Source of the DNA: Dendrobates tinctorius
Lineage: Eukaryota
Assembly (NCBI RefSeq): GCF_039654945.1
Contig: NW_027361853.1
Coordinates: forward strand, 3,782,001-3,846,000
Direction: 5' to 3'
DNA: 64,000 bases
The notes beneath the pieces were generated by a model. The model saw nothing but the letters and a program-made list of their open reading frames with translations. It was not told the origin of the DNA and did no database searches. The stretch's first letter is position 1; each line of letters begins with the position of its first letter. Of this stretch, positions 11,966 to 64,000 are shown piece after piece. The position numbers and the translations under genes were made by a program.

Positions 11966-14198
11966 GCGTTACGGGTCTACAACTAGGTGGCAGCATGATG
12001 ACAGGTATATGTACACCATATATGTTGTTAATTCTGTGACGTCTATTTATACCACATGGGAGTTATACTCCTTCCCATTTGGCGCACTAGGGGGATGGAT
12101 ATTAAGTGAGCAAGGGTTTTTGCTTATTAAGGACTTATGTTACTATATCCCCTCACATGATGCATAATTAGGACCTGCATTGCAGAGTCCATGCTATGTT
12201 TGACCTATATGTTGTGACCCTATACAATTTATCTTATCCACAACAATGCTTGTTTGTCTATCCAGGTGAGGTATTTACCTCTTTATATGTGCTCTGTATC
12301 TCTTATGTGCATTATATAATGTTAATATGATGGTTTTGTATTTATTGAAATAAAATTTGTATTTTTGGATCTTTTTGCTCCATTTTTTCTCCTTTGGTGG
12401 TATGTATTGATTCTGGAGGGATCATTGGTCTAATTTTTCATGAAATGAGGTTTTTAGTGTTTGGATTGTTCACTTCTACAGCCGCTTGTTAAACAATCCC
12501 CTGGTCATATAAGAGATTCCAAACAAGTTTTGGAATTTTTTTCGGAAAAAATTTGGTTATCCACATATACTTGGGTATGCTGTGATGTAGTATCCCGTTA
12601 TACGTGTATTCCGCATAAATTGGCTATTCAGGCATTGAAGTTTTATTTGTACAAATTCAGTGAATATACAGTGGACTTAATAGATTACATTCTTCAGGTG
12701 GTTAGTTTTTTATTGTCTCATAATTTTTTTTGCATTTAATGGTGAGTGCTAGCTACACAAAACAGGCGTGGCCATGGGGGTGAAATTTTCATCTTCATTG
12801 GCAAATTTGGTGATGTGTTTTTGGGAATTGCAATTCATATTCTCAGCCTCTAATCCTTTTTCTGAATACTTGGTCTGGTATGGCAGATACATCGATGATA
12901 CCCTCATTATTTGGGGGGGTGGTATCTGCCATGCCGGACTTTGTGAACTATTTGAATTCTAAAGACTTTAATATTAGGTTTACGTGTAAATATGACACCA
13001 ATAAAATTTCATTCTTGGATTTGGAATTGGTTGGTATTTCCAACCATTCCATTCAGTCCAGTCCGCTCAGTGGAAATACGGTTCTTCATGCTACTAGCAG
13101 TCATAATAAACATACGATTAAGTTTGTCCCCGTAGGGGAGTATACTAGCATAAAACGTAACTGCAGTCATGCATCTGATCTGGATAGGGAATTTAAACAA
13201 GTGACTGAAAAGCTAAAAAAACGCAAATACCCAGTGTGGACGCTGAATAGAGCCCGAAATTTAGTTCCTAAAAAACAACTTGCTGAATTAATTAAGTCTA
13301 ATACAAGTAAAAGTACAAAAGAGTGGAACAAAAAAACCGTATGTATGTTTTCAATTTAGCCCACAATTTATGCAAATTAAGAATATAATCAATAAATATT
13401 TACCTATATTGTATGAGGATGAAAAATTAAAAAAAAGGTACTTAATACAGTTGTTAATATAATTTCGAGACGTGCACCAACTCTGGGCAACAAACTGTCA
13501 CCCAGTACATTTTTTCTGAATAAGAAAAAACCTCTACGTAATTGGTTAAATTGTATGGGCTTTTATAGATGTGGCTCTAATAGCTGTAAGACTTGTGCAC
13601 ATGCGATAGTCATCAAAGATTGTTTTGAAAGCGGAGATCAAATGAAATATAAAATTAGGAGTTATATTAACTGTAATTCCACAAATGTGGTGTATAGGGT
13701 TACTTGTAAGATCTGTAAGCTTTCCTATGTAGGATGTACATCTAGGAAACTTAAGGTTCGCATCAGAGTACATTTATATGATATAACCAGTACAAAACCA
13801 CGGATAGAAATGTATCTGCGGCATCGCAACATTTCATTGTTTGTCATGCCAGGAGCATTAGTTCCTTTGAAGTTCATGGCATAGAAATAGTTAATACTCC
13901 ATATCAAGGGGGGGATGCCAGAAGACTACTTCTCACAAGAGAAGCGTATTGGATATATCGTTTAAACACAAGATTTCCACATGGCTTAAATAAGCACAAT
14001 GATTTAGCGCTTCATTATAATTAAACTAATGTGTTTATAATTTGGATAAGGCGTAAGCAACAGCTTTTTTAAACGTTCTTTTGGATTTTTATGTTTGTTC
14101 TTTCTGATTTCACATGTGTGTTTGTCATGTGATTTAATACTGCAATACTAGTGGTTAGTTCTTTCTATATAGAACTCTGTGTCGGAAGAATGGACATG

Positions 14199-19312: not shown

Positions 19313-19450
19313 TCAAGTTGCCTGAAGTAGCTCCCACTGCTGACTTGTAAGATCTGATTGGCAAGGGTTGATCAGAACCCTGGAGGAATGAGTATCCAAA
19401 CACATTGCACTACTCAGGTGCTGTAAGAAGTGTCCTTTCAACTTCCATTT
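19313..19450 (-). CDS. GALNT16: Polypeptide N-acetylgalactosaminyltransferase 16, last coding exon (ricin lectin C-terminus)
   Basis: AG acceptor at 19451-19452. Encodes KWKLKGHFLQHLSSAMCLDTHSSRVLINPCQSDLTSQQWELLQAT* (138 nt, phase 0, QxW motif). Confidence 0.9.
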   Translation of the reverse strand, partial: KWKLKGHFLQHLSSAMCLDTHSSRVLINPCQSDLTSQQWELLQAT

Positions 19451-20646: not shown

Positions 20647-21616
20647 CTAGATTATGGCCCGATGCTATCGCATCGGGAGGATGCGATAGCATCACACCTC
20701 TTGCCATGTTAACCCTCAACACACACACTCCACTCACCTTTCACCATCTCCACTCACTCTTTCACTCCACATACGACCCCTTCTCTCACTCCGTCTCTCA
20801 TACTCACGCCGTCATCGCCGCTGCTCCACGATCCCCGATATCTTCTTCCGCCGGCGCCATCCTGGATCCAGACGTTGTCCACGCCGGCGACATGTTCTTG
20901 CGGCGACGCCATCTTGAGTATCGTGAAATCCCGCGATAATCAAGATGGTGTCGCCGCAAGAACATGTCGCCGGCGTGGACGACGTCGGGATCCAAAATGG
21001 CGTCGGCGAAATCTCGCGAGTTTTCGCCGACGCCATTTTGGATCCCGACGTCGTCCTTGCCGGCGACATGTTCTTGCGGCGACGCCATCTTGAGTATTGC
21101 AGGATTTCGCTGATCCAAAATAGCGTCGCCGCAGGAACATGTCACCGGCGTGGATGCGGTCGGGATCCAAAATGGCGTTGGCGAAATCTCGCGAGATTTC
21201 GCCGACGCCATTTTGGATCCCGACCGCATCCACGCCGGCTACATGTTCTTGCGGCGACGCCATCTTGACTATCGCGGGATTTCGCCGATCCAAAATGGCG
21301 TCGCCGCAAGAACATGTCGCCGGCGTGGAGGACGTCTGGATCCAGGATGGCGCCGGCGGAAGAAGATGTCGGGGATCGTGGATCAGCGGCGATGATGGCG
21401 TGAGTATGAGAGACGGAGTGAGAGAAAGGGTCGTATGTGGAGTGAAAGAGTGAGTGGACGTGAGTGGAGATGGTGAAAGGTGAGAGGAGTGTGTGTGTTG
21501 AGGAGGAGTGGTGTGTTGAGGGTTAACATGGAAAGAGGTGTGCGGTGACGTCACCGGTTACAACTGGACGGAAGTTGTTACAACCGGAAGCTGCTTAGGG
21601 CATTTATTATTATAGA
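20647..21616 (-). mobile_element. Non-autonomous Helitron with palindromic interior
   Basis: Minus strand has A|TC...CTAG|T termini and no TSD. An 8-bp hairpin cccgatgc-tatc-gcatcggg (20658-20677) lies 7 nt from the terminal CTAG. Confidence 0.8.
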
Positions 21617-21623
21617 TAGTCAC

Positions 21624-21740
21624 CTGTCTGCTGTCTTTCTGGTTGCATGGTTCAAGCATGACCAAGGCACCTGTGGAAAATGAGGTGATGGACAAGCATT
21701 TATCTTGCTGTCGGATCAAAGTGTCACTGAGCGCCCACTC
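21624..21740 (-). CDS. GALNT16: GALNT16 coding exon (lectin domain)
   Basis: AG/GT bounded, 117 nt, EWALSDTLIRQQDKCLSITSFSTGALVMLEPCNQKDSRQ. Confidence 0.92.
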
Positions 21741-22071
21741 CTGGAATAAAAACAGATCAGAAATTAGATTGATTAAAAAATACAACTCTACTAGCATAAC
21801 TGTGTATATGGCATCAACATCTATGGCATCTACAACCTTCCCTTGTTCAAAGTCACTCGAGTCTCATTTACTTCCCTTTCCAACATTTTGACTCCCTCCC
21901 CTCTTTGCCTGTAGAAGCCACATGACCATTAGAACCAATAAAGAAGTACAGATAAATTTGGAGAATCCAATCAATGTTGGAACAGGAAAATGGGTATTTA
22001 TAAGATGATTTCATTTCTTTAAAGAACAAAATAAAGGACTGAACTTTTAATGCTTCGATCATTTTGCTCAT

Positions 22072-22528
22072 TTACCTGCGTGGTCGGTGGAGCGCTTGCA
22101 GTTCCCTTACCTGCGTGGTCGGTGCAGCGCTTGCAGTTCCCTTACCTGCGTGGTCGGTGCAGCGCTTGCAGCTCCCTTACCTGCGTGGTCGGTGCAGCGC
22201 ATGCAGTTCCCTTACCTGCGTGATCGGTGCAGCGCTTGCAGCTCCCTTACCTGCGTGGTCGGTGCAGCGCATGCAGTTCCCTTACCTGCGTGGTCGGTGC
22301 AGCGCTTGCAGTTCCCTTACCTGCGTGGTCGGTGCAGCGCTTGCAGCTCCCTTACCTGCGTGGTCGGTGCAGCGCATGCAGTTCCCTTACCTGCGTGATC
22401 GGTGCAGCGCTTGCAGCTCCCTTACCTGCGTGGTCGGTGCAGCGCATGCAGTTCCCTTACCTGCGTGGTCGGTGCAGCGCTTGCAGTTCCCTTACCTGTG
22501 TGGTCGGTGCAGTGCTTGCAGTTCCCTT
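22072..22528. repeat. 35-bp minisatellite (13 units) made of the exon 3' end plus splice donor
   Basis: Minus-strand unit GTAAGGGAACTGCAAGCGCTGCACCGACCACGCAG. Donor GT at 22075+35k for k=0..12. Confidence 0.97.
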
Positions 22529-22637
22529 GCAGCTTCCAACCCCGGCCAATGTATTTCCCGCTGTGTCTGGTCCTTGGGATTCCAAGCAATTTCCTCCCTG
22601 CTTTATAATCCCTGTGATCACTTCTTTCTCGGGAATT
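22496..22637 (-). CDS. GALNT16: GALNT16 coding exon (start of lectin domain)
   Basis: AG at 22638-22639; 142 nt; IPEKEVITGIIKQGGNCLESQGPDTAGNTLAGVGSCKGTASTAPTTQ. Phase fits both neighbours only with the first donor. Confidence 0.9.
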
Positions 22638-23264
22638 CTATTTTATAAATATATAAATATTACAATGTAATAAATATATAAAATTACATGTGATACAATT
22701 AACTTTTAAATATGATTGTCGCTGCGTACGAGGAAAGCTACACCTCTTAAAATTGAACATGTCCACTCCGATCTCTGCACAAAAATTACACCTTTTGCAC
22801 AATTTTGCACAAAGATTTGTAAAAATGGTGGGTGCAGTTTGTGCCAAGAACTGGTGAAAATACATTGATAACTTCCCAACAATGTCCGTAAGAACCTGTA
22901 TAACTTCAGCATAAAGTTGTATGGCTGCTGCGTGTTGCTGTGCAAGTATTATTGTACTCTATGGACAGGGATATTTCCCGTATAGGCGATGCTTTCTTAT
23001 ATACAAGTACATATAGAGTCTAATGCTGGAGTAATACACACCCTATAAAAATACGGTCTGTTTTTCATGGACCAGAATTGCACAAATGTTTCATGAACAG
23101 TGATCCGTATGTCATCCGATTGTCATGCGAAGATGCAATTTTCTCGCATCTAAGCATCCGTGTGACATCTGTATGGCATCCGTATGATGAGATTTTCTCG
23201 ACGGCTTGCAAAATGGACATATAATGGAGCCAAATGATAGGTTAAAACACAAAAGAAAGAATAG

Positions 23265-23392
23265 NNNNNNNNNNNNNNNNNNNNNNNNNNNNNNNNNNNN
23301 NNNNNNNNNNNNNNNNNNNNNNNNNNNNNNNNNNNNNNNNNNNNNNNNNNNNNNNNNNNNNNNNNNNNNNNNNNNNNNNNNNNNNNNNNNNN
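23265..23392. other. Assembly gap
   Basis: N run. Confidence 1.
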
Positions 23393-25255: not shown

Positions 25256-27202
25256 CAGTACAGACTAAAAGTTTGGAGTATCTCCAACAAAGTGTTAATC
25301 CGCACAGCCGGGAAGCTCATTCATTGCACAAATAGTTATGTAAGCTGGTACTGCAAATATGCGTACTATGGGAAGTGCTCCAAAAACTGGGGTGCCACTC
25401 CAAAGCAATTAGTCACAACGGCTACACCAAAAAAGAAAACGGATGGCACTCACCGGTTAAAATCTTCTTTATTCCAATACACGTCGGCATAGGGAGGATG
25501 GGAGCGGGAGTGGAAATGACGACAGCCGTTTCGTGCTGCAGTAGTGCTTCTACTGGAGAGTAGAAGCGCTACTGCAGCGCGAAACGGCTGTCGTTATTTC
25601 CACTCCCGCTCCCATCCTCCCCATGCCGACGTTTTAAAGTATTGGAATAAAGAAGATTTTAACCAGTGAGTGCCATCCGTTTTCTTTTTTGGTGTAGACT
25701 AAAAGTTTGGACACACCTTCTCATTCAAAGAGTTTTCTTTATTTTCACAACTGTGAAAATTGTAGATTCACTCTGAAGGCATCAAAACTATGAATTAACA
25801 CATGTGGAATTATATAATTAACAAAAAAATGTGAAACAACTGAAAATATGTCTTATATTCTAGGTTCTTCAAAGTAGCCACCTTTTGCTTTGATTACTGC
25901 TTTGCACACTCTTGACGAGCTTCAAGAGGTAGTCACTGGAAATGGTCTTCCAAAAGTCTTGAAGGAGTTCCCAGACTGTGGAGGCCAGGTCATCTGGCGG
26001 AGCACCCCATCACTCTCCTTCTTGGTCAAATAGCCCTTACACAGCCTGGAGGTGAATTTGGGGTCATTGTCCTGTTGAAAAATAAATGATGGTCCAATTT
26101 ATCGCAAACCGGATGGAATAGCATGCCGCTGCAAGATGCTGCGGTAGCCATGCTGGTTCAGTATGCCTTCAATTTTGAATAAATCCCCAATAGTGTCACC
26201 AGCAAAGCACCTCCTCCTCCATGCTTCACGATGGGAACTAGGCATGTAGAGTCCTTCTGTTCACCTTTTTTGCGTCACACAAGGACACGGTGGTTGGAAC
26301 CAAAGATCTCAAATTTGGACTCATCAGACCAAAGCACAGATTTCCACTGGTCTAATGTCCACTCCTTGTGTTCTTTAGCCCAAACAAGTCTCTTCTGCTT
26401 GTTGCCTGTCCTTAGCAGTGGTTTCCTAGCTATTTTACCATGAAGGCCTGCTGCACAAAGTCTCCTCTTAACAGTTGTTGTAGCGATGTGTCTGCTGCTA
26501 GAACTCTGTGTGGCATTGACCTGGTCTCTAATCTGAGCTGCTGTTAACCTGCGATTTCTGAGGCTGGTGACTCAGATTAACTTATCCTCTGCAGCAGAGG
26601 TGACTCTTGGTCTTCCTTTCCTGGGGCGGTCCTCATGCGAGCCAGTTTCTTTGTAGCGCTTGATGGTTTTTGCCACTGCACTTGGGGACACTTTCAAAAT
26701 TTTCCCAATTTTTCGGACTGACTGACCTTCATTTCTTAAAGTAATGATGGCCACTCGTTTTTCTTTACTTAGAATTTGTATTATGGCAAGAAAAAAGCAG
26801 CTAACAGTCTATTCAGTAGGACTATCACCTGTGTATCCACCAGACTTCTGCACAACACAACTGATGGTCCCAACCCCATTTATAAGGCAAGAAATCCCAC
26901 TTATTAAACCTGACAGGGCACACCTGTGAAGTGAAAACCATTTCCGGTGACTACCTCTTGAAGCTCATCAAGAGAATGCCAAGAGTGTGCAAAGCAGTAA
27001 TCAAAGCAAAAGGTGGCTACTTTGAAGAACCTAGAATATAAGATATATTTTCAGTTGTTTCACACTTTTTTGTTAACTATATAATTCCACATGTGATAAT
27101 TCATAGTTTTGATGCCTTCAGAGTGAAACTACAATTTTCATAGTCAGGAAAATAAAGAAAACTCTTTGAACGAGAAGGTGTGTCCAAACTTTTGGTCTGT
27201 AC

Positions 27203-31658: not shown

Positions 31659-33136
31659 AAAAGATGAGAGGCCTGTAATTGACATCATAGGTAGACCACA
31701 ACTAGACCACCACAAAATGTAAAAACAAGACCAGAAAATCACCTTGTCTGATTTGGCAAGATTTATTTTGCAAATTATGGTGGAAAATAAGTATTTAATT
31801 ATTAACAAAAGTTCATCTCAATATTTTGTTATATATTCTTTGTTGGCAATGGCAGAGGTCAAACGTTTTCTGTAAGTCTTCAGAATGTTGGCCCATTCCT
31901 CCATGCAGATCTCCTCTACAGCAGTGATATTTTGGGCCTGTCGCTGGGCAACAAAGACTTTCAACTCCCTCCAAAGGTTTTCTCTGGGGTTGAGATCTGG
32001 AGACTGGCTAGGCCAATCCAGGACCTTCATATGCTTCTTACAAAAGCCACTCCTTTGTTGCCCTGGCGGTGTGCTTGGGATCATTATCATGCTGAAAGAC
32101 CCATCCAGGTTCCATCTTCAGTGCCCTTGCTGACGGAAGGAGGTTTGCACTCAAAATCTCATGATACATGCCCCCATTCATTTTTTCATGTACACTGATC
32201 AGTTGTTCTGGTCACTTTGCAGAGAAACAGCCCCAAAGCATGATGTTGCACCATGCTTCACAGTAGGTATGATGTTCTTTGGATGCAACTCAGAATTCTG
32301 TCTCCGCCAAACACGACAAGTTTTATTTCTACCAAACAGTTCTACTTTGGATTCATCAGACCATATGACATTCTCCCAATATTCTTCTGGATAATCCAAA
32401 TGCTCTCTAACAAACTTCAGATGGGCCCATACATGTACTGGCTTAAGCAGGGGGTCACGTCTGGCACTGCAGGATCTGAGTCCCTGGCGGCGTAGTGTGT
32501 TACTGATGGTAGCCTTTGTTACTGTGGTCCCAGCTCTATGCAGGTCATTCACAAGGGTCCCCTATGTGGTTTTGGGATTTTTGCTCACCGTTCTTGTGAT
32601 CATTTTGACGCCGCGGGATGATATCTTGCATGGAGCCCCAGATCGAGGGAGATTATCAGTGGTCTTGTAGGTCTTCTATTTTCTTATTATTGCTCCCACA
32701 GTTGATTTCATCACACCAAGCTGCTTGCCTATTGCAGATTCAGTCTTCCCAGCCTGGTGCAGGGCTACAGTTTTGTTTCTGGTGTCCTTTGGCAGCTCTT
32801 TGATCTTCACCATAGTGGAGTTTGGAGTGTGACTGTTTTAGGTTGTCAACAAGTGTCCACAAGTTCAAACAGGTGCCGTTACCACAGGTAATGAGTGGAG
32901 GACAAAGGAGACTCTTAAAGAAGAAGTTACAGGTCTGTGAGCCAGAAATCTTGCATGTCTTTAGGTGACCAAATACTTATTTTCCACCATAATTTGCAGA
33001 ATAAATCTTGCCAAATCAGACAAGGTGATTTTCTGGATTTGCTTTCTCATTTTGACTCTCATAGTCATGGTCTACCTATGATGTCAATTACAGGCCTCTC
33101 ACAATTGCACTTGCACAGTTGATGGCTGACTAAATA
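31659..33136 (-). mobile_element. Tc1-like transposon (second family), decayed
   Basis: Fragments VIWSDESKVELFG and [15 protein letters not shown]. Inverted homolog of 59154-60716. Confidence 0.9.
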
Positions 33137-45778: not shown

Positions 45779-48505
45779 TTATATCCAGTCAGTAACTCCA
45801 CTCAGCCAGTCATCATCATCAGACTCAGGTGTTTGGTAATCCGCCTCACTACCTTCCTTCACCAGAAGAGGGAGTTCATCAGACCTCAATGGTAAAGGGG
45901 AAAATGAACACATAACAGTACCTCCCCCTTGAGGAGGGGTCACTGAACCCTCATCCACGCCACCAGGGCGATCAGGGTGAGCCCGATGAAAGGCACGCAC
46001 CAATCTTTTGGCATGAATATCAGAGGCAGAGACCCAGGAATTATCCTCCTGACCATAACCCTTCCACTTAACCAAATACTGGAGTCTCCGTCTAGCCAGA
46101 CGGGAATCCAGTACTTTCTCTACCTCATATTCCATGTTACCTTCAACCAATACAGGGTCTGGAGGTGCCACCCCCGGAACAACAGGTTCAACAAACCTCT
46201 TCAACAAAGATTTATGGAACACATTATGGATTTTAAATGTGACAGGAAGAGCCAAACGAAAAGAGACCGGATTAAAAATCTCCAAAATCTTGTAAGGTCC
46301 AATAAATCTAGGCTTAAACTTAGGAGAAGCCACCTTCATAGCAATATTTTTTGATGATAACCACACCATATCACCAACCTTAAACTGGGGACCAATGGTC
46401 CTATGTCGGTTGGAAAACCGCTGGGCCTTTTCCTGGGAGAGAGATAACTTATCCACCACTTGGTCCCAGATCTGGTGCATTCTCTCCACCACAGTGTCAA
46501 CACCTGGGCAGGCAGAGGGCTCCACCTGCCCTGAAGAAAATCGAGGATGAAACCCAAAGTTACAAAAAAAAGGTGACATCAAAGTGGCAGAAATAGCTCT
46601 ATTATTTAAAGCAAATTCGGCCAAGGGCAAAAATGAAACCCAATCATCCTGATCAGCAGAAATAAAACATCTCAAATATGACTCCAAGGTCTGGTTTGTT
46701 CTCTCTGTCTGCCCATTGGTCTGAGGGTGAAAAGCAGAGGAGAAGGACAACTGAATTCCCAGCTTGGAACAGAAAGTTCTCCAAAATCTAGACACAAACT
46801 GGACTCCTCTGTCAGATACAATGTTCTCAGGAATCCCGTGCAAGCGAACCACCTGTTGTAAAAACAGGGGCACCAACTCAGAGGAAGACGGCAACTTAGG
46901 GAGTGGTACAAGATGAACCATCTTAGAGAACCTGTCACAAATCACCCAAATAACAGTCATCCTCTGAGAGACAGGCATATCAGAGATGAAATCCATTGAA
47001 ATATGGGTCCATGGCCTCTTGGGGACAGGCAAAGGCATCAACAATCCACTAGAGCGAGAACACGATTTAGACCGGGAGCACGTCCCACAGGACTGCACAA
47101 AATTCCTGACATCACGAGACAAGGAGGGCCACCAAAAAGACCGACTCACCAGATCTCTAGTACCAAAAATACCTGGATGACCAGCCAAAGCAGAGCAATG
47201 AACTTCAGACATCACTCTCTTCTTCCACTGGTCAGGAACATACAACTTTCCACTGGGACAACGCTCAGGTTTGTCCTCCTGGAACTCTTCCAGAGCACGT
47301 CTCAAATCGGGCGAGATGGCAGAAAGAACTACCCCTTCGCCTAAGATGGTAGCAGGCTTGGTCACCACAGGAGAATCAGCAAAGAAGCTCCTAGAGAGGG
47401 CGTCTGCCTTGACATTCTTAGTTCCAGGAAGAAAAGAAACCACAAAATCAAAACGTGTAAAAAACAAGGCCCACCTATCCTGTCTAGGGTTCAAGAGCTT
47501 AGCCGACTCTAGGTAAATCAAATTCTTGTGGTCAGTGAGGACCACGACTTGATGCTTAGCTCCCTCCAACCAATGTCTCCACTCCTCAAATGCCCATTTC
47601 ATGGCCAACAGTTCCCGATTCCCCACATCATAGTTACGTTCAGATGGAGAGAACTTTCGGGAAAAGAAAGCACAGGGATTCATTTCAGATGTTACAGGAT
47701 CCTTTTGGGACAAAACAGCTCCTGCACCAATCTCAGAAGCATCCACCTCTACCTGGAACGGAAGTGAGACATCAGGTTGCCGCAAAACCGGGGCGGAGGT
47801 GAATCTTCGCTTCAGCTCCTGAAAGGAAGAAACAGCCTCCGGAGACCAATTTAACACATCAGCACCCTTCTTAGTCAAATCAGTCAATGGCTTGGCAATA
47901 CTAGAAAATTTTGCTATAAATTTCCGATAAAAATTAGCAAAACCCAAAAACTTCTGGAGGGCCTTCAAAGAAGTGGGCTGAACCCAATCATAAATGGCCT
48001 GTACCTTGGCCGGGTCCATTTCAGTAGTTGACGGGGACAAAATAAATCCCAAAAAAGAAATCCTCTGTACTCCAAAAAGGCATTTAGATCCTTTGACATA
48101 CAGGGAATTCTCCCTCAAGATCCGGAACACAGTCCAAATATGTTCCACATGAGAATCCCAATCCTTGGAGAAGATCAAAATATCATCCAGATAGATAATC
48201 AAAAATGTATCGACAAAATCTCGGAAAATATCGTTCATGAAGCACTGGAAGACAGAAGGGGCATTAGTGAGCCCAAAAGGCATCACCAGGTACTCAAAAT
48301 GTCCCTCCGGAGTATTAAACGCCGTCTTCCATTCATCCCCATGCTTAATGCGAATAAGATTATACGCCCCCCTGAGGTCAAGCTTGGTAAACCAGCAAGC
48401 ACCTTTAACTCTGGAGAATAGATCAGAAATCTGGGGTAACGGATACTGATATTTAACAGTAATTTTGTTGAGGGCACGATAATCAATACAAGGTCTTAAT
48501 GATCC
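45779..48505 (-). CDS. Gypsy pol: RT (YLDD), RNase H, integrase, chromodomain; open frame running into the 3' LTR
   Basis: ORF 45779-48286 extends upstream without stops to about 48505 (LRPCIDYRALN). Chromodomain YEVEKVLDSR...[15 protein letters not shown]. Confidence 0.9.
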   Translation of the reverse strand, partial: GSLRPCIDYRALNKITVKYQYPLPQISDLFSRVKGACWFTKLDLRGAYNLIRIKHGDEWKTAFNTPEGHFEYLVMPFGLTNAPSVFQCFMNDIFRDFVDTFLIIYLDDILIFSKDWDSHVEHIWTVFRILRENSLYVKGSKCLFGVQRISFLGFILSPSTTEMDPAKVQAIYDWVQPTSLKALQKFLGFANFYRKFIAKFSSIAKPLTDLTKKGADVLNWSPEAVSSFQELKRRFTSAPVLRQPDVSLPFQVEVDASEIGAGAVLSQKDPVTSEMNPCAFFSRKFSPSERNYDVGNRELLAMKWAFEEWRHWLEGAKHQVVVLTDHKNLIYLESAKLLNPRQDRWALFFTRFDFVVSFLPGTKNVKADALSRSFFADSPVVTKPATILGEGVVLSAISPDLRRALEEFQEDKPERCPSGKLYVPDQWKKRVMSEVHCSALAGHPGIFGTRDLVSRSFWWPSLSRDVRNFVQSCGTCSRSKSCSRSSGLLMPLPVPKRPWTHISMDFISDMPVSQRMTVIWVICDRFSKMVHLVPLPKLPSSSELVPLFLQQVVRLHGIPENIVSDRGVQFVSRFWRTFCSKLGIQLSFSSAFHPQTNGQTERTNQTLESYLRCFISADQDDWVSFLPLAEFALNNRAISATLMSPFFCNFGFHPRFSSGQVEPSACPGVDTVVERMHQIWDQVVDKLSLSQEKAQRFSNRHRTIGPQFKVGDMVWLSSKNIAMKVASPKFKPRFIGPYKILEIFNPVSFRLALPVTFKIHNVFHKSLLKRFVEPVVPGVAPPDPVLVEGNMEYEVEKVLDSRLARRRLQYLVKWKGYGQEDNSWVSASDIHAKRLVRAFHRAHPDRPGGVDEGSVTPPQGGGTVMCSFSPLPLRSDELPLLVKEGSEADYQTPESDDDDWLSGVTDWI

Positions 48506-49969
48506 ACCTTTTTGGCTACAAAAAAAAAACCGGCACCCAAGGGTGACGAGGATGGTCTAATATGACCCTTCTCCAATGCCTCCTTAATATAGGATCGCAT
48601 AGCCTCGTGCTCGGGTACAGATAAATTGAAGAGCCGACCCTTGGGAAATTTACACCCCGGGCTCAGTTCAATTGCACAGTCATAACTCCTATGAGGAGGC
48701 AGAGACGCAGACTCATTCTCACTAAATACATCATAAAAGTCCGCCAAATAATCAGGAACATCATGCGACTGAGGAGAGGTGGAAAACACCGGAGCCTCAC
48801 TAAAGGCACACCGACAACCCCAACTCACCACAGACACAGATTTCCAATCCAAAACTGGATTATGAATTTGTAACCAGGGAAACCCCAGAACAATAGTATC
48901 ATGCAGATTATGCAACACCAAAAATCTATAATTTTCTTGATGGTCTGGGGCGACCCGCATTACCACCTGGGTCCAAAACTGAGGTTTATTTTTAGCCAAA
49001 GGAGTAGCATCAATCCCCCTCAAAGGGATAGGCGTCTGCAGAGGTGTCATCGGAAATCCACAACGTTTAGCAAAATCCAAGTCCATTAGGTTTAGGGCTG
49101 CTCCCGAATCCACAAAAGCCTTGGCGGAAAATGTGGACAGGGAGCAGATCAGAGTAATAGCCAGAAGAAACTTAGGTTGAACACCACCAACAGAAAACGT
49201 GTGTGCAAAGCGTTTCTCTTGTTTAGGACAGACAGAAATAATATGCGAGGCATCTCCACAGAAAAAACACAACTTATTACGCCTTCTGAACTCCTGACGC
49301 TGCTCTCTGGAAAAAACTATCACATTGCATAGGTTCAGACATTTGTTCAACAGGTGGCAACACCTCTCGTGCAGCTTTGCGTTCACGCAAACGCCGATCA
49401 ACCTGAATGGCTAATGACATAGAATCGTCAAGACCAGAGGGAACAGGAAATCCCACCACAGAATCTTTTACGGCTTCTGACAACCCCTTCCAAAAGAGAG
49501 CAGCCAAGGCATTATCATTCCAGGTAGTAAGTACTGCCCACTTTCGGAATTTTTGACAGTACAATTCTGCAGAATCACGACCCTGGTTCAATGCCAGCAG
49601 GGTATTTTCAGCCTGATCAATGGCATTAGGTTCGTCATACAACAACCCCAAGGCCTGAAAAAATGCGTTCACATTAGTCAGAATAGGATCATCTGGTTTC
49701 AAAGAAAACGCCCAATCCTGGGGATCGCCACGCAGCAAAGAGATGACAATTTTAACCTGCTGCGCGGAGCTCCCTGACGAGTTAGGCTTCAAGGCAAAAA
49801 ATAATTTACAATTATTTTTGAAATTCAAAAATTTAGACCGATCCCCAAAAAATACATCAGGTGTAGGAATCTTTGGTTCAGCAGCATGTGAATGAGCAAG
49901 GTAGGCGGAAAATCCCCGCACTTCCGCAGCGAGCTGCTCCACACGATCAGACAATTGCTTTATCTCCAT
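48496..49969 (-). pseudogene. Gypsy gag, zinc knuckle and protease, with frameshifts near 49315 and 48507
   Basis: gag 49277-49969. CFFCGDASHIISVC and VDSGA lie in ORF 48496-49401. Confidence 0.85.
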
Positions 49970-52900
49970 TGAGAGAAAAAAAAATTCCCCCTACGGCCTC
50001 AGAGATATAGAGGAAAAAATATACACAATTTTTTTTTTTTTTTTTACAATTCTTTCCTGCTATTGAGTACCCTAGGATCTGCGGTATGGCGGGTGATTCT
50101 GTTATGATTGAGTCACCGTAGGAGGCAGACACAAAAATAGAAGCTACGTCCAGAAAACCAGAGAAGTTGGCAACTATCAGATTGCAGACCCCTGAACCTA
50201 TCAACACAACTAGCAGTAGCCGTGGGGGGTTCCTACGATGCCCTAGACCCCTCGATCACAGCCGGAGCGCTAAATAGCCTAAAGACAGAAATGGAAATCT
50301 AAACTGCCCCAGAGCAGACCCCAAAGTAAAAGGCAGCCCCCAACACATAATGACGGTGAAGCAAGATGAAAGAACACTCACACAGATAGAAAGATAGGCT
50401 GAGCAAACGATGGGGCCCAAGCTAACTAAACAGAAAAGGAAAGGAAGGTTGCTGTCTGCAATCTGCCAAAACCCTATCAAAGACATAAGCTAACAAGCTG
50501 ATATGAAAAAGACCCTGAAGCAGCTAGGCTTCAAAAACTAAATCAGCACTCAGGTATTTTCAGAAGACAGAGCTAAAGGAATTCAGCACACCCCAGCAGG
50601 GAATGGCAGAAATCCAGAAAAACAAAGCAAAACAAAGTCAAAGCACCAATGCAAAAAGCCGAGCAGAAAACTTAGCTTTAGAGGAGCAGGAATTCAGACT
50701 GGTCTCCAAGGATCCCACAGAGAAATCACCCGCAGGGCAGAAGGGCGTCGGCAGACTTATATCCAGTCAGTAACTCCACTCAGCCAGTCATCATCATCAG
50801 ACTCAGGTGTTTGATAATCAGGCTCACTACCTTTCTTTACCAGAAGAGGGAGTTCCTCGGGCCTCAGTAGTGAAGGGGAAAATGAACTCACAACATTGAT
50901 CCTTCTACAATGTGACAGCCCTTTAGATATTAGTAGACAGCTATTAAGTCTCCTCTCAGTCTTCTCTTTTGCAAACTAAACATTCCTAAATCCTGCAACC
51001 TTTCCTCATAAGACAGGGTTTGCAGACCGGTCACCATTCTGGTCGCTCTTTTCTGAACTTGCTCCAGTTTGTTGATGTCTTTTTTAAAATGTGGTGCCCA
51101 AAACTGGACACAATATTCCAGATGAGGTCTGACCAAAGAGGTGTAGAGGGAAATAATGACTTCACGTGATCTAGACTGTATGCTTCTGTTAATACATCCT
51201 AGAATTGCATTTGCCTTTTTTGCTGCTGCATCACACTGCTGACTCATATTCAGTCTGTGATCTATTAGTATACCAAGTCTTTTTCACATGTGCTGTCACT
51301 TAGCCCTATTCCTCCCATTCTATATATGCTTTTTTCATTTTTATTGCCCAGATGTAGTACTTTGCATTTCTCCCTGTTAAAAACCATTCCGTTACTTGCT
51401 GCCCACTTCTCCAGTTTATTTAAATCTTTTTGAATCCTCTCTCTCTCTTCTCTAGTATTAGCTATCCCTCCTAGTTTTGTGTCATCAGCAAATTTAATCA
51501 GTTTACCCTCAATTCCTTCATCTAAATCGTTGATAAAGATGTTGAACAATACAGGGCCCAGGACAGAGCCCTGTGGTACCCCACTTGAGACATTCTTCCA
51601 ACTGGATGTGCAGCCATTTACGACCACTCTTTGGGTCCGATCACTAAGCCAGTTATGAATCCACGTAACAGTTGCCTTGTCCATTCCATACGTAGTCATT
51701 TTTTCAATAAGGATTGTATGAGAGACTTTGTCAAATGCTTTGCTGAAGTCAAGATATACTATATCCACAGCATTTCCTTGATCCACCCAATCAGTGATTC
51801 CGTCATAGAAGGAAATTAAGTTAGTCTGACATGACTTATTAGTTACAAACCTATGCTGACTCTGTTTAATCACTTCATTCTTATCCAGGTACTGACATAC
51901 ATGTTGTTTAATAATTTGTTCAAAGACCTTTCCTTGAATAGAAGTCAGACTCACCGGCCTATAGTTGCCTGGGTCCACCTTCTTCCCCTTTTCCCTTTCC
52001 ATCAAATTGACATCCAATGTCAATGCCTGATGCTCTTTCCTGTTGACCTGGAGAAGTCTTGCGATTTAATCGCAAGTCACACATGTGGTGCGTTTTCAAT
52101 GCGATTTTTAATCGCATCCATAGACTTGCATTGGCGAGTCCGATCCGAAAATTGGTGACAATCGCAGCATGCTGCGATTGTCTAGGTCCGAGGAACGGAT
52201 CCGATAAAAAAACGCATGATGGGAGCAGCAACATAGAATAACATTGGGACGAATGCAATGCGATTTTTTATCGCATTGCATTCGTCCGATTTAATCGCTA
52301 GTGTGACCCCGGCCTAAAAGTGCTATCCATTGTTTTCTTTAACCGATGTAAATTTGATCAAAGGTTTATTGGTCCATTTTTCACGTATTTGGAGACATCA
52401 GTCGTGTGAATCTACCCGTACCAGCAAAATCATCTTACAATCTGATCAGACAGTGCAAAATTAATATATGGGCCCTTCACAGTCCAATATATCATCATAA
52501 TGCACAAGTCCACCCATTTAAAGCCATCCTTTCTATAAAAAAAAAAAAATCCTAATCTGAAGACCTAAAATTAAATGCCTATGAGGATAGGGGTACTGAG
52601 CTGTTCTGATGTGCAAGTTTGGTTTTGGCATTATCGGCCGGTATAAATGACCCTTATTATGGGCAGCCATCTTTATCACATAATAAAACAGTTGTCTTTC
52701 TACTGGCTGACGAACACAAAGTGATCTATTCTCCTTTGCCTTTACTTGATGTTTTGCCCGCTTAAGGATCTCATTGAAGCCTTCTGACAGCGAATCCCCC
52801 CTCCCTTGACGGCCTTAAAAAAAATAAATTGGTCTGTTTGGTCTCTTTATGCAAGAAAACATCTCCTGATAAATATAAATCACATCTGACACTTTATTAC

Positions 52901-61167: not shown

Positions 61168-64000
61168 TGTTATGAATGGGTCACCGAGAAGAAAAAAGCA
61201 AAACAAGCTAAGTCACAGAAAACCAGAGAGGTTGGTATCTATGCAGATTGCAGATCCCTAATCCTACCACACAACTAGCAGCAGCCGTGGAGCGTACCTA
61301 CGATGATCCTAGACGCCTCTTCAAGGCCGGAGGACTAAAGCCTAAAGCAAGAAAAAGGGGAAAACTAACTGCCCCAGAGCAGACCCCAAAGGAAAGAAAG
61401 CCCCCACACATGTATTGACGGTGAAACAAGATGAAAGCACAAACACAGGCAGGAAAATAAGCTGAGCAAACGATGGGGCCCAAACTAACTACAAAGGAAA
61501 GGAAAGGGAAAGACACTGTCTGCACCCTGCAAAAAACCCTACAAAAATAATGTCAAACACTTCTGATAGCAAAATTAACCCTGAAGTCACTAGACTTCTC
61601 CCACTATATCAGCACTCTGAAATATTCCTAGACATAGCAAAAAGAGGCCAAACTAGTAAGGGACAAAAAGCAAATTGGCAAATACAGATAAATAAGAGTG
61701 GAAATTCAGCACAGCCCCCAGCCGGGGCTGGCTGACCACACAAAAAACTGAATAGACCAACAAAATCAAGTGTGAACATTAGCAGAAAAACTTAGCTTTA
61801 GATGACTGGAACAGAGCTGAAAACCAAGAGCTGACAAGCCAGAAGGAATCACCAGCAACTGAATAGGGCGTCGGCTGTCTTAAATCCAATCCGAGATTCC
61901 TGAGGTCCAATCGTCATCCTCATTCTCATGTGGCAGATTTCCACCGATCAAATCAGCCTCACTACCTCCTGTTACCACCAGAGGGAGTCTGGAAGGAAAA
62001 CTCACAACTGGTGAACCAGAGAATGAACTCACAACAGTACCCCCCCTTGAGGAGGGGTCACCAAACCCTCATCCACGCCACCAGGCCGATCAGGATGGGC
62101 CCGGTGAAAAGCACAAACCAATCTATTGGCATGTATATCAGAGGCAGAGACCCAAGAATTATCCTCCTGACCATAACCCTTCTATTTGACCAAATACTGG
62201 AGTCTCCGGCTAACCAAACGAGAATCCAATATATTCTCTACCTCATATTCCACATTGCCTTCAACCAATACAGGGTCAGGAGGTGCTGCCATAGGAACCA
62301 CTGGCTCAACAAACCTCTTCAACAGAGATTTGTGAAATACGTTATGGATCTTGAACGTAACTGGAAGAGCCAATGAAAACGAAACAGGATTAAGAATTTC
62401 CAAAATCTTATAAGGACCAATAAATCTTGGCTTAAATTTAGGAGATGCAACCTTCATAGGAATATTCTTAGACGACAACCAAATCATATCACCCACTTTA
62501 AACCGGGGACCAATGGTCCTATGCCGTTTGGAAAATCGCTGGGCCTTTTCCTGGGAGAGTGACAACTTATCCACCACTTGGTCCCATATCTGCTGCATTC
62601 TCTTAACCACAGTGTCCACACCTGGGCAGGACGAAGATTCCACTTGCCCTGAAGAGAATCGAGGATGAAACCCAAAATTACAGAAAAAGGGTGACATCAA
62701 AGTGGCAGAACTAGCTCTATTGTTCAGTGCGAATTCGGCCAAGGGCAAAAATGAGACCCAATCATCCTGATCAGCAGAAATAAAACATCTCAAATAAGAT
62801 TCCAAGGTCTGGTTTGTTCTCTCAGTCTGTCCATTGGTCTGGGGATGAAGCGCGGAGGAGAAGGATAACTGACTTCCCAGATTGGAACAAAAGGCTTTCC
62901 AGAATCTGGAAACAAACTGGACTCCTCTGTCGGACACAATGTTCTCAGGAATCCCATGTAACCGAACCACCTGTTGTAAAAACAAGGGCGCCAACTCAGC
63001 GGAAGATGGTAACTTTGGGAGTGGTACAAGATGGACCATCTTCGAAAATCCATCACAAATCACCCAGATAACAGTCATTCTCTGAGAGACAGGAAGATCA
63101 GAAATAAAATCCATTGAGATATGGGTCCATGGCCTCTTGGGCGCCGGCAATGGCATCAGCAACCCACTAGAACGAGAACAGGGTTTAGACCGAGAACAAG
63201 TCCCACAGGACTGTACAAAATTCCTGACGTCACGAGATAAGGCAGGCCACTAAAAGGACCGACTCACCAAATCTCTGGTACCAAAAATACCTGGATGACC
63301 AGCCAATGCAGAGCAATGAATTTCAGACATCACTCTCTTTCTCCACTGGTCATGAACATACAATTTTCCCATAGGGCAACGCTCAGGTTTATCCTCCTGA
63401 AATTCCTCCAGGGCACGTCTCAAATCGGGCGAAATGGCAGAAAGAACTACCCCTTCACCTAGGATGGTAGTAGGCACGGTCACACTAAGAGAATCGGCAC
63501 AGAGACTCCTAGAAAGGGCGTCTGCCTTAACATTCTTAGTGCCCGGAAGAAAAGAGACCACAAAATTAAAATGCATGAAAAACAAGGCCCCCATCTAGCC
63601 TGTCTAGGATTCAAGCGTTTGGCCGACTCCAGATAAATCAAATTCTTGTGATCGGTGAGGACCACAACTTGATGTCTAGCTCCCTCCATCCAATGTCTCC
63701 ACTCCTCAAATGCCCACTTCATGGCCAACAATTCCCGATTCCCCACGTCATAGTTGCGTTCAGATGGGGAGAACTTTCGAGAAAAGAAGGCACAGGGATT
63801 CATCTTAGAAGTCAGAGGGTCTTTTTGGGACAAAACAGCTCCTGCACCAATCTCAGAAGCATCTACCTCCACTTGAAATGGAAGTGAGACATCAGGTTGC
63901 CGTAAAACTGGAGCTGAAGTAAATCTCTGCTTAAGCTCCTGAAATGCTGAGATAGCCTCAGGAGACCAATTCAGCACATCAGCGCCCTTCTTGGTCAGAT
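61168..64000 (-). mobile_element. Second chromovirus-type Gypsy element (related subfamily): 3' LTR 61168-62036 plus decayed RH/IN/chromodomain; continues beyond window
   Basis: ORFs 63480-63977, 63250-63594 and 62182-63162 are highly similar to the pol of 45122-50895 but carry stops and frameshifts. PPT at about 62037-62052. Confidence 0.93.

What the first reader, a model, noticed from the sequence alone, without database searches (positions are those of the whole stretch)
22072..22528. Minisatellite made from an exon-intron junction: 13 tandem splice donors, only the first productive
Seen: the 3' end of the GALNT16 exon 22496-22637 plus its donor was amplified as a 35-bp unit. This gives 12 CAG|GTAAGG donors and a distal CAG|GTAAAT (22075) that abuts unique intron sequence. 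Donor 1 (22495) keeps frame. Donor 2 adds 35 nt and frameshifts. Donors 3-13 include an in-frame TAA (22457-22459). Inference: the distal donor is the ancestral one and is now non-productive, so the gene depends on a donor created by the duplication. Twelve competing donors could route transcripts to NMD or to a lectin-truncated enzyme, making repeat number a tunable dial on GALNT16 dosage. The exonic copy also differs in coding (STAPTTQ versus SAPPTTQ in the distal copy).
Basis: partly seen in the sequence, partly recalled or inferred. Interest (0 to 1): 0.85.

Follow-up and report, generated by a model that had tools for sequence, protein, structure and literature searches.

The report
Splice-donor minisatellite in frog GALNT16 intron
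A poison-frog GALNT16 intron begins with 13 tandem copies of its own exon-intron junction, but assembled transcripts show only the first splice donor in use; this repeat type is already known from human F7, IFI6, CBS, LMNB2 and PDGFA.

Summary
Thirteen in-register 35-bp units lie at 22072-22526 on the minus strand. The first unit is the last 31 nt of a GALNT16 lectin-domain exon plus GTAA, so there are twelve CAG|GTAAGG donors and a distal CAG|GTAAAT. Only donor 1 keeps the reading frame.

The array was born from the junction. Bufo, Engystomops and Leptodactylus have the same exon end in a single copy. Ranitomeya imitator has the orthologous array with the same distal boundary, expanded to about 259 units (9.2 kb). 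Of those units, 241 carry a weaker CAT|GTAAGG site.

Logan contigs from four runs, covering three closely related species, show one joint only: donor 1 to acceptor 21740. Annotated frog proteins use the same junction.

This is a new member of a known kind. Borensztajn et al. 2006 (PMC1557585) list such minisatellites in human F7, IFI6, CBS, LMNB2 and PDGFA. In those genes the most upstream donor is the one used, alone or with the next two sites.

The "dosage dial" idea is unsupported. It is not excluded, because contigs drop rare isoforms.

The scan had already noted two more cases on other DNA of this genome (SURF2, ODAD3).

The parts
22496..22637 (-). GALNT16 lectin-domain exon (142 nt; ..IPEKEVITGIIKQGGNCLESQGPDTAGNTLAGVGSCKGTASTAPTTQ). 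Its last 31 nt are the exonic part of repeat unit 1.
   Evidence: tblastn of R. imitator GALNT16 (P0229) gives 98% identity. RNA contigs cover exactly 22495/6-22637, with loose ends matching the upstream exon.
22072..22526 (-). Array of 13 x 35 bp units (unit GGGAAC..CGCAGGTAA). u1 is 22492-22526 and u13 is 22072-22106.
22490..22498 (-). Donor 1, CAG|GTAAGG: the productive donor and the only one seen in transcripts.
   Evidence: A joint 22495/6 to 21740 in X19, X5 and X17, and a loose end carrying u1-specific letters in X20. In frame.
22105..22463 (-). Eleven pseudo-donors (donors 2-12), each CAG|GTAAGG at 35-nt spacing. All are non-productive.
22070..22078 (-). Distal donor 13, CAG|GTAAAT, abutting unique intron. 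The same boundary is present in R. imitator.
22457..22459 (-). In-frame TAA (AGG TAA across donor 2), which terminates any product that reads past donor 2.
22317..22491 (-). Higher-order block 1 (u2-u6, 175 bp), identical to block 2.
   Evidence: Unit variants listed.
22142..22316 (-). Higher-order block 2 (u7-u11, 175 bp), an exact copy of block 1. This shows growth by a 5-unit duplication.
21741..22071 (-). Unique remainder of the intron. It is 81.5% identical to the R. imitator intron.
   Evidence: Intron contigs in X5 and X17.
21624..21740 (-). Next GALNT16 exon (EWALSD..KDSRQ), whose acceptor is used by donor 1.
19313..19450 (-). Coding part of the last GALNT16 exon (KWKLKG..WELLQAT plus stop).
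   Evidence: The loose end at 21624 reads AAATGGAAG...

Best explanation
This is a junction-spanning minisatellite of the human F7 IVS7 type.

Origin (inferred): in an ancestor of dendrobatid frogs, a 35-bp segment was tandemly duplicated. The segment held the last 31 nt of a GALNT16 lectin-domain exon plus the first 4 nt (GTAA) of the intron. Its breakpoints show AA microhomology (gcAA|GGGAAC ... GTAA|ATGAG).

Growth (inferred from unit variants): slippage and unequal exchange then expanded and homogenised the array independently in each lineage. The window species has 13 units, including an exact 5-unit (175-bp) block duplication. Ranitomeya imitator has about 259 units.

Splicing (shown at contig level): every unit carries a strong 5' splice site, yet the spliceosome uses the most upstream one. 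The rest of the array is removed as ordinary intron.

Cause of that choice (inferred by analogy): this would follow from exon definition or 5'-to-3' first-come selection, as demonstrated experimentally for F7.

Fitness effect (inferred): the array is most likely a neutral or nearly neutral structural variant rather than a regulator of GALNT16 dosage.
For: The array and its donors are real.

The gene is GALNT16: there are Ricin_B hits, named orthologues, and the exon is 100% identical in amino acids to R. imitator GALNT16.

Single-copy junctions with the same exon end occur in Bufo bufo, Engystomops pustulosus and Leptodactylus fuscus. The array therefore came from the exon, not the exon from the array.

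R. imitator has the orthologous array of 258.6 units with the same distal GTAAATGAG boundary, and its u2 is identical to the window's u1.

Fixed variants are lineage-specific, which indicates independent homogenisation.

Donor 1 to 21740 is the only joint in contigs of X19, X5 and X17. X20 shows the same junction as a loose end.

All frog annotated proteins read ..TQ|EW.. with the same exon length.

The array RNA folds no better than shuffled sequence (z = +1.7), so no masking structure is needed to explain the choice.

The class and its behaviour are described in PMC1557585.
Against: Logan contigs drop rare variants, and a donor-2 junction differs from the donor-1 junction by only two letters near the joint. 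Minor use of pseudo-donors would therefore be invisible.

In human IFI6 and CBS the first two pseudo-sites are used constitutively (PMC1557585 Introduction), so exclusive use of donor 1 is not guaranteed.

In X5 the array contig has depth 92, against 14.5 for unique intron. That is somewhat more than k-mer multiplicity in 13 units predicts.

Copy number in the window could not be re-measured from reads.
Confidence: 0.8

Rival explanations
1. A meaningful fraction of pre-mRNAs uses pseudo-donors, mainly donor 2, producing PTC-bearing transcripts that are degraded by NMD or give a lectin-truncated enzyme. Repeat number would then tune GALNT16 output.
For: All 12 downstream donors are as strong as, or nearly as strong as, donor 1, and all are non-productive. 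The stops lie more than 55 nt upstream of the last exon junction, so NMD is plausible by the established rule. IFI6 and CBS use their first two pseudo-sites (PMC1557585). Repeat length is associated with splicing for many human tandem repeats (PMC10078293 abstract). The array contig depth in X5 is higher than expected.
Against: No such joint appears in contigs from four runs of three species. R. imitator carries about 20 times more units, yet its exon is conserved and its gene model uses donor 1. In R. imitator the pseudo-donor most at risk of use, u2, keeps full strength (CAG|GTAAGG at 14052), which argues against selection on pseudo-donor use. F7 pseudo-sites do not compete even when strengthened to a consensus value of 91. 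Associations of the F7 repeat alleles (HVR4) with coronary heart disease risk are inconsistent (PMC3166910).
Confidence: 0.1
2. The array is a selected intronic element. Reiterated U1-binding sites would reinforce definition of the upstream exon or protect the transcript from premature cleavage and polyadenylation. In the window species the four UGCAUG-bearing units could add to this.
For: The array has persisted in at least two dendrobatid lineages. Four of 13 units carry UGCAUG within 320 nt downstream of the exon. The scan noted two more junction arrays in this genome.
Against: Three other hyloid frogs splice the same exon without any array, one with an intron of only 84 nt. Unit sequence and number differ greatly between the two lineages. 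The UGCAUG motif is essentially absent from the R. imitator array (1 in 9.2 kb). Persistence is what a neutral minisatellite would show anyway.
Confidence: 0.07
3. This is an assembly artefact: a mis-assembled or artificially expanded repeat, with no such array in the animal.
For: Tandem arrays are prone to assembly error, and the copy number was not re-counted here.
Against: A second individual has contigs spanning the u2-u4 variant order and the u13/intron junction. A related species has a two-unit contig. An independent assembly of another genus has the orthologous array. The exact 5-unit higher-order structure is not what a collapsed repeat looks like.
Confidence: 0.03

Closest known systems
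Human F7 intron 7 (IVS7) 37-bp VNTR (HVR4)
   Same: It is a minisatellite of almost the same unit size (37 vs 35 bp). Its first monomer spans the exon-intron boundary, so the authentic donor is followed by identical pseudo-donors. Only the most upstream donor is used (PMC1557585).
   Different: The F7 monomer holds only 4 exonic nt, against 31 here. F7 has 5-9 copies that are polymorphic within humans; here there are 13 copies, and about 259 in another genus. The F7 site is weak (UGG/gugggu), whereas the frog site pairs with U1 at 8 of 9 positions. In F7 some pseudo-sites would keep the frame; here none does. The F7 behaviour is shown by 50 minigene constructs; here the evidence is assembled transcripts only.
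Human IFI6 (6-16) intron 2 and CBS intron 13 junction minisatellites
   Same: The splice donor is reiterated by a junction-spanning minisatellite, with 25 pseudo-sites in IFI6 and 15-20 repeats in CBS (PMC1557585 Introduction).
   Different: In those genes the first two pseudo-sites are used constitutively alongside the authentic donor. No such use was seen here, although the test was insensitive.
Human LMNB2 (100-bp unit) and PDGF (81-bp unit) junction minisatellites
   Same: Only the authentic, most upstream donor is used (PMC1557585 Introduction).
   Different: Their units are longer. Here the unit is 35 bp, so the donors are far more crowded.
SURF2 intron 3 and ODAD3 exon 6 donor arrays in this same frog genome (scan notes s1-382829, s1-383058)
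   Same: Both are tandem arrays of the gene's own exon-intron junction. For SURF2 the follow-up reported that only the first donor is used.
   Different: They lie in other genes with other units. I did not examine them.

Membership tests
Junction-spanning minisatellite with reiterated 5' splice sites (F7 IVS7 type) | Head-to-tail array of a roughly 10-100 bp unit | tested here: met
   35 bp x 13.1 copies, 94% matches. 13 in-register units, 0 expected by chance.
Junction-spanning minisatellite with reiterated 5' splice sites (F7 IVS7 type) | The first monomer spans the exon-intron boundary, so the authentic donor sequence recurs in the intron | tested here: met
   u1 (22492-22526) is 31 exonic nt plus GTAA. 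The exon end is fixed by RNA contigs and protein alignment. There are 12 identical CAG|GTAAGG sites.
Junction-spanning minisatellite with reiterated 5' splice sites (F7 IVS7 type) | Splicing uses the most upstream donor (or the first few); downstream copies are silent pseudo-sites | tested here: met
   The only joint in contigs of 4 runs from 3 species is donor 1 to 21740. Sensitivity is limited because contigs drop rare forms.
Junction-spanning minisatellite with reiterated 5' splice sites (F7 IVS7 type) | Variable copy number (VNTR behaviour) | tested here: inconclusive
   Between genera the count is 13 against about 259 units. Polymorphism within the species cannot be counted from k-mer contigs.
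Junction-spanning minisatellite with reiterated 5' splice sites (F7 IVS7 type) | Pseudo-sites are functional when the authentic site is inactivated | not testable with these tools
   This needs minigene mutagenesis.
GALNT16 (polypeptide GalNAc-transferase 16) orthologue | GT-A catalytic domain plus C-terminal ricin-B lectin domain, collinear with named GALNT16 proteins | tested here: met
   Ricin_B_lectin hits on the last two exons. Eight exons in the window align to R. imitator GALNT16 residues 251-562, and the last six are 82-100% identical. The nearest named proteins are all GALNT16.

The most novel reading that the evidence does not exclude
Pseudo-donor load does matter. A small, copy-number-dependent fraction of GALNT16 pre-mRNA would be lost to donors 2 onward. 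The sweep of the weaker CAT|GTAAGG variant through 241 of about 259 units in Ranitomeya imitator would then be a compensatory change that allowed a 9-kb expansion. With three junction arrays noted in one genome, dendrobatid frogs would be a natural series for measuring how 5' splice-site choice scales with 1, 13 and about 259 competing sites.
Probability: 0.1. Interest if true: 0.55.

Novelty: new member of a known kind. Interest (0 to 1): 0.3.

Why it matters
For GALNT16 itself the array probably matters little: the enzyme is made from donor 1 and its sequence is conserved.

Its value is as a natural experiment in 5' splice-site selection. Related frogs carry the same exon with 0 pseudo-donors (Bufo, Engystomops, Leptodactylus), 12 full-strength ones (this species) or about 258 mostly weakened ones (R. 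imitator).

That is a wider range than the human F7 model (4-8 pseudo-sites) on which the oriented-scanning idea rests.

It also adds a third junction minisatellite in one genome. This hints that such arrays may be common in repeat-rich frog genomes and could confuse gene prediction and splice-aware read mapping.

Tried and rejected
1. RNA structure masking the pseudo-donors. The fold of 22040-22560 is no more stable than shuffled sequence (z = +1.7), so this was rejected.

2. The exon captured the end of a pre-existing satellite. This was rejected because three outgroups have the same exon end without any array, and the unit occurs nowhere else in the window.

3. Dating the origin with Phyllobates terribilis. 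I also tried Dendropsophus, Nanorana, Rhinoderma and the chromosome-level R. imitator assembly. No DNA was returned, because each gene range exceeds 100 kb.

4. Searching for short or partial frog GALNT16 gene models or transcript-derived proteins with P0225. No further dendrobatid sequences were found.

5. Counting copy number or minor junctions from reads. This was not possible: all four runs are kept as contigs only, and the single read-laying run was used.

6. Selection for weakened pseudo-donors in R. imitator. I considered this but judge it unlikely, because u2, the site most likely to compete, keeps CAG|GTAAGG. Homogenisation of the array interior, with older units surviving at the edges, explains the pattern more simply.

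7. The species of the window stays coded. It is a dendrobatid close to R. imitator but not identical to it (exons 94-96% identical in nucleotides, intron about 82%).

Full report
**Observation**

The minus strand of 21600-22800 shows an exon that ends ...GGA ACT GCA AGC ACT GCA CCG ACC ACA CAG at 22496. It is followed by gtaagg and then by a perfectly phased repeat.

- Tandem Repeats Finder reports a 35-bp period with 13.1 copies and 94% matches at 22072-22528.
- A pattern search with the consensus unit GGGAAC..CGCAGGTAA finds 13 in-register copies with at most 2 mismatches, at 22072-22526. None is found elsewhere in the 64-kb window, and 0 are expected in shuffles.
- Unit 1 (22492-22526) consists of the last 31 nt of the exon plus GTAA. 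Every unit therefore carries CAG|GTAA.
- Because the next unit begins with GGG, donors 1-12 read CAG|GTAAGG. The last one reads CAG|GTAAAT and runs into unique intron.
- Units 2-6 and 7-11 are identical 175-bp blocks, so part of the growth was a 5-unit duplication.

A script spliced each of the 13 donors to the next exon:

- Donor 1 is in frame.
- Donor 2 adds 35 nt, shifts the frame, and stops after 8 codons of the next exon.
- Donors 3-13 all contain the in-frame TAA at 22459-22457.

**The gene**

The window holds the last eight exons of a polypeptide GalNAc-transferase on the minus strand.

- The last two exons hit Pfam Ricin_B_lectin.
- A whole-library HMMER search with the catalytic exon, followed by two word-index searches and a cluster look-up, gave only GALNT16-named relatives.
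- The closest is GALNT16 of the poison frog Ranitomeya imitator. It is 100% identical in the repeat-bearing exon and differs by one residue in the next exon.
- At the nucleotide level, exons are 94-96% identical to R. imitator and the unique intron 81.5%.
- The window therefore comes from another dendrobatid frog.

**Which came first**

All frog GALNT16 proteins have the same exon length and end ..CKGTAS(T/N)AP(A/T)TQ|EW... Genomic loci of three non-dendrobatid hyloid frogs show the same exon end in a single copy with no array:

| Species | Junction | Intron |
|---|---|---|
| Bufo bufo | ..GGGAACTGCAAGCACTGCCCCGGCCACACAG\|GTATAC | 944 nt |
| Engystomops pustulosus | ..CTACACAG\|GTAAGA | 84 nt |
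| Leptodactylus fuscus | ..CCACACAG\|GTAATT | 406 nt |

The repeat was therefore made from the exon-intron junction; the exon did not capture a satellite. The exonic unit u1 keeps the ancestral letters (GCACTG, CACACAG; Ser-Thr-Ala-Pro). All twelve intronic units of the window share two A>G changes, and u13 has one private change.

**The relative with a giant array**

The R. imitator locus (L001) has the orthologous exon followed by 258.6 units, 9.2 kb in all.

- The array ends ..CACACAT|GTAAATGAGGAAAATGATCG, the same boundary as the window's ..CGCAG|GTAAATGAGCAAAATGATCG. The array therefore predates the split of the two lineages.
- Its second unit is identical to the window's u1.
- 241 units read CAT|GTAAGG (G>T at position -1, one fewer U1 pair). 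Only six read CAG|GTAAGG, among them the authentic donor and the very next unit.
- Each lineage has fixed its own variants, as expected from repeated contraction, expansion and conversion.
- Because the pseudo-donor nearest the exon keeps full strength, I read the G>T sweep as turnover rather than as selection against pseudo-donor use. This step is inference.

**Transcripts**

- X19 and X5: two samples of the window's species.
- X20 and X17: two close relatives (intron about 2.4% diverged in X17).

What they showed:

- The only joint is 22495/6 to 21740, GT..AG on the minus strand, in X19, X5 and X17.
- X20 shows the same junction as a loose end whose letters (GCACTGCACCGACCACA) are specific to u1.
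- Loose ends at 22637 and 21624 read into the neighbouring exons, so these contigs are spliced RNA.
- X5 also holds unspliced intron (depth 14.5 against 262 for the exon) reaching into u13, and a 100-nt contig with the unit order u2-u3-u4.
- X17 holds a 65-nt array contig, so the close relative has the array too.

Two limits apply. Contigs cannot count copies, and they drop rare isoforms. A donor-2 junction would differ from the main one by only two letters close to the joint. Minor use is therefore not excluded.

**Mechanism**

The array RNA is not unusually structured (z = +1.7 against shuffles).

The simplest account is the one established for the human F7 gene. When identical donors follow one another, the most upstream one is selected and the others do not compete, even though they are functional.

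Borensztajn et al. 2006 (PMC1557585) showed this with 50 constructs. Their Introduction lists the class: minisatellites whose first monomer spans an exon-intron boundary.

| Human gene | Array | Donor use |
|---|---|---|
| F7 | 37 bp, 5-9 copies | Only the first donor |
| IFI6 | 25 pseudo-sites | Authentic donor plus the next two |
| CBS | 15-20 repeats | Authentic donor plus two pseudo-sites |
| LMNB2 | 100-bp unit | Only the authentic donor |
| PDGF | 81-bp unit | Only the authentic donor |

The frog array meets the defining structural features and, at contig level, the behavioural one.

A "dial" has also been sought for F7. The intron 7 repeat alleles (HVR4) have been tested for association with coronary heart disease risk, with inconsistent results (PMC3166910).

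**Verdict**

- The origin story is supported.
- The regulatory story is unsupported, though not excluded.
- It is a new member of a known kind.

Two things lift it slightly above routine. One is the comparative series of 0, 12 and about 258 pseudo-donors on one conserved exon. The other is that the scan had already noted the same construction on other DNA of this genome, in SURF2 intron 3 and at ODAD3 exon 6 (I did not test those).

No assembly gap lies in or next to the feature; the nearest N run is at 23265-23392.

Noticed in passing
L001:13984-23204 (Ranitomeya imitator, GCA_958301615.1): The orthologous GALNT16 intron holds about 259 units (9.2 kb) of the same 35-bp junction repeat. 241 units have CAT|GTAAGG and six have CAG|GTAAGG. 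Four unit variants make up most of the array.
   Followed up: yes
window 22177-22211, 22247-22281, 22352-22386, 22422-22456 (minus strand): Four of the 13 units carry UGCAUG, the Rbfox-type hexamer, created by an A>T variant within 320 nt downstream of the exon. The R. imitator array has only one in 9.2 kb.
   Followed up: partly
window 22387-22486 in run X5: The array contig has depth 92, against 14.5 for unique intron and 262 for the exon. That is more than k-mer multiplicity in 13 units predicts. This animal may carry a longer allele, or array-containing RNA may accumulate.
   Followed up: no
window 22072-22491 vs L001 array: The two changes fixed in all 12 intronic units of the window are both A>G and both create CpG (GCACTG>GCGCTG, CACACAG>CACGCAG). 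This could reflect GC-biased conversion in the array, but that is speculation.
   Followed up: no
window 21000-21358: A 175-bp tandem repeat (2.1 copies, 87% matches) lies in the following GALNT16 intron, inside a region with long open frames on the minus strand.
   Followed up: no
window 45782-49990 and 62032-63594 (minus strand): A Ty3/gypsy-like retrotransposon has an intact-looking 925-aa pol frame (45782-48556) and a gag-like frame (49280-49990). A second partial copy lies at 62032-63594. Both are inside GALNT16 introns. This was judged by eye from translations only.
   Followed up: no
window 31821-32837 and 25925-26260 (minus strand): There are Tc1/mariner-like transposase remnants in GALNT16 introns, judged by eye.
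   Followed up: no
L001:13000-13096: A run of 97 G in the R. imitator contig upstream of the exon. It may be an assembly or sequencing artefact.
   Followed up: no
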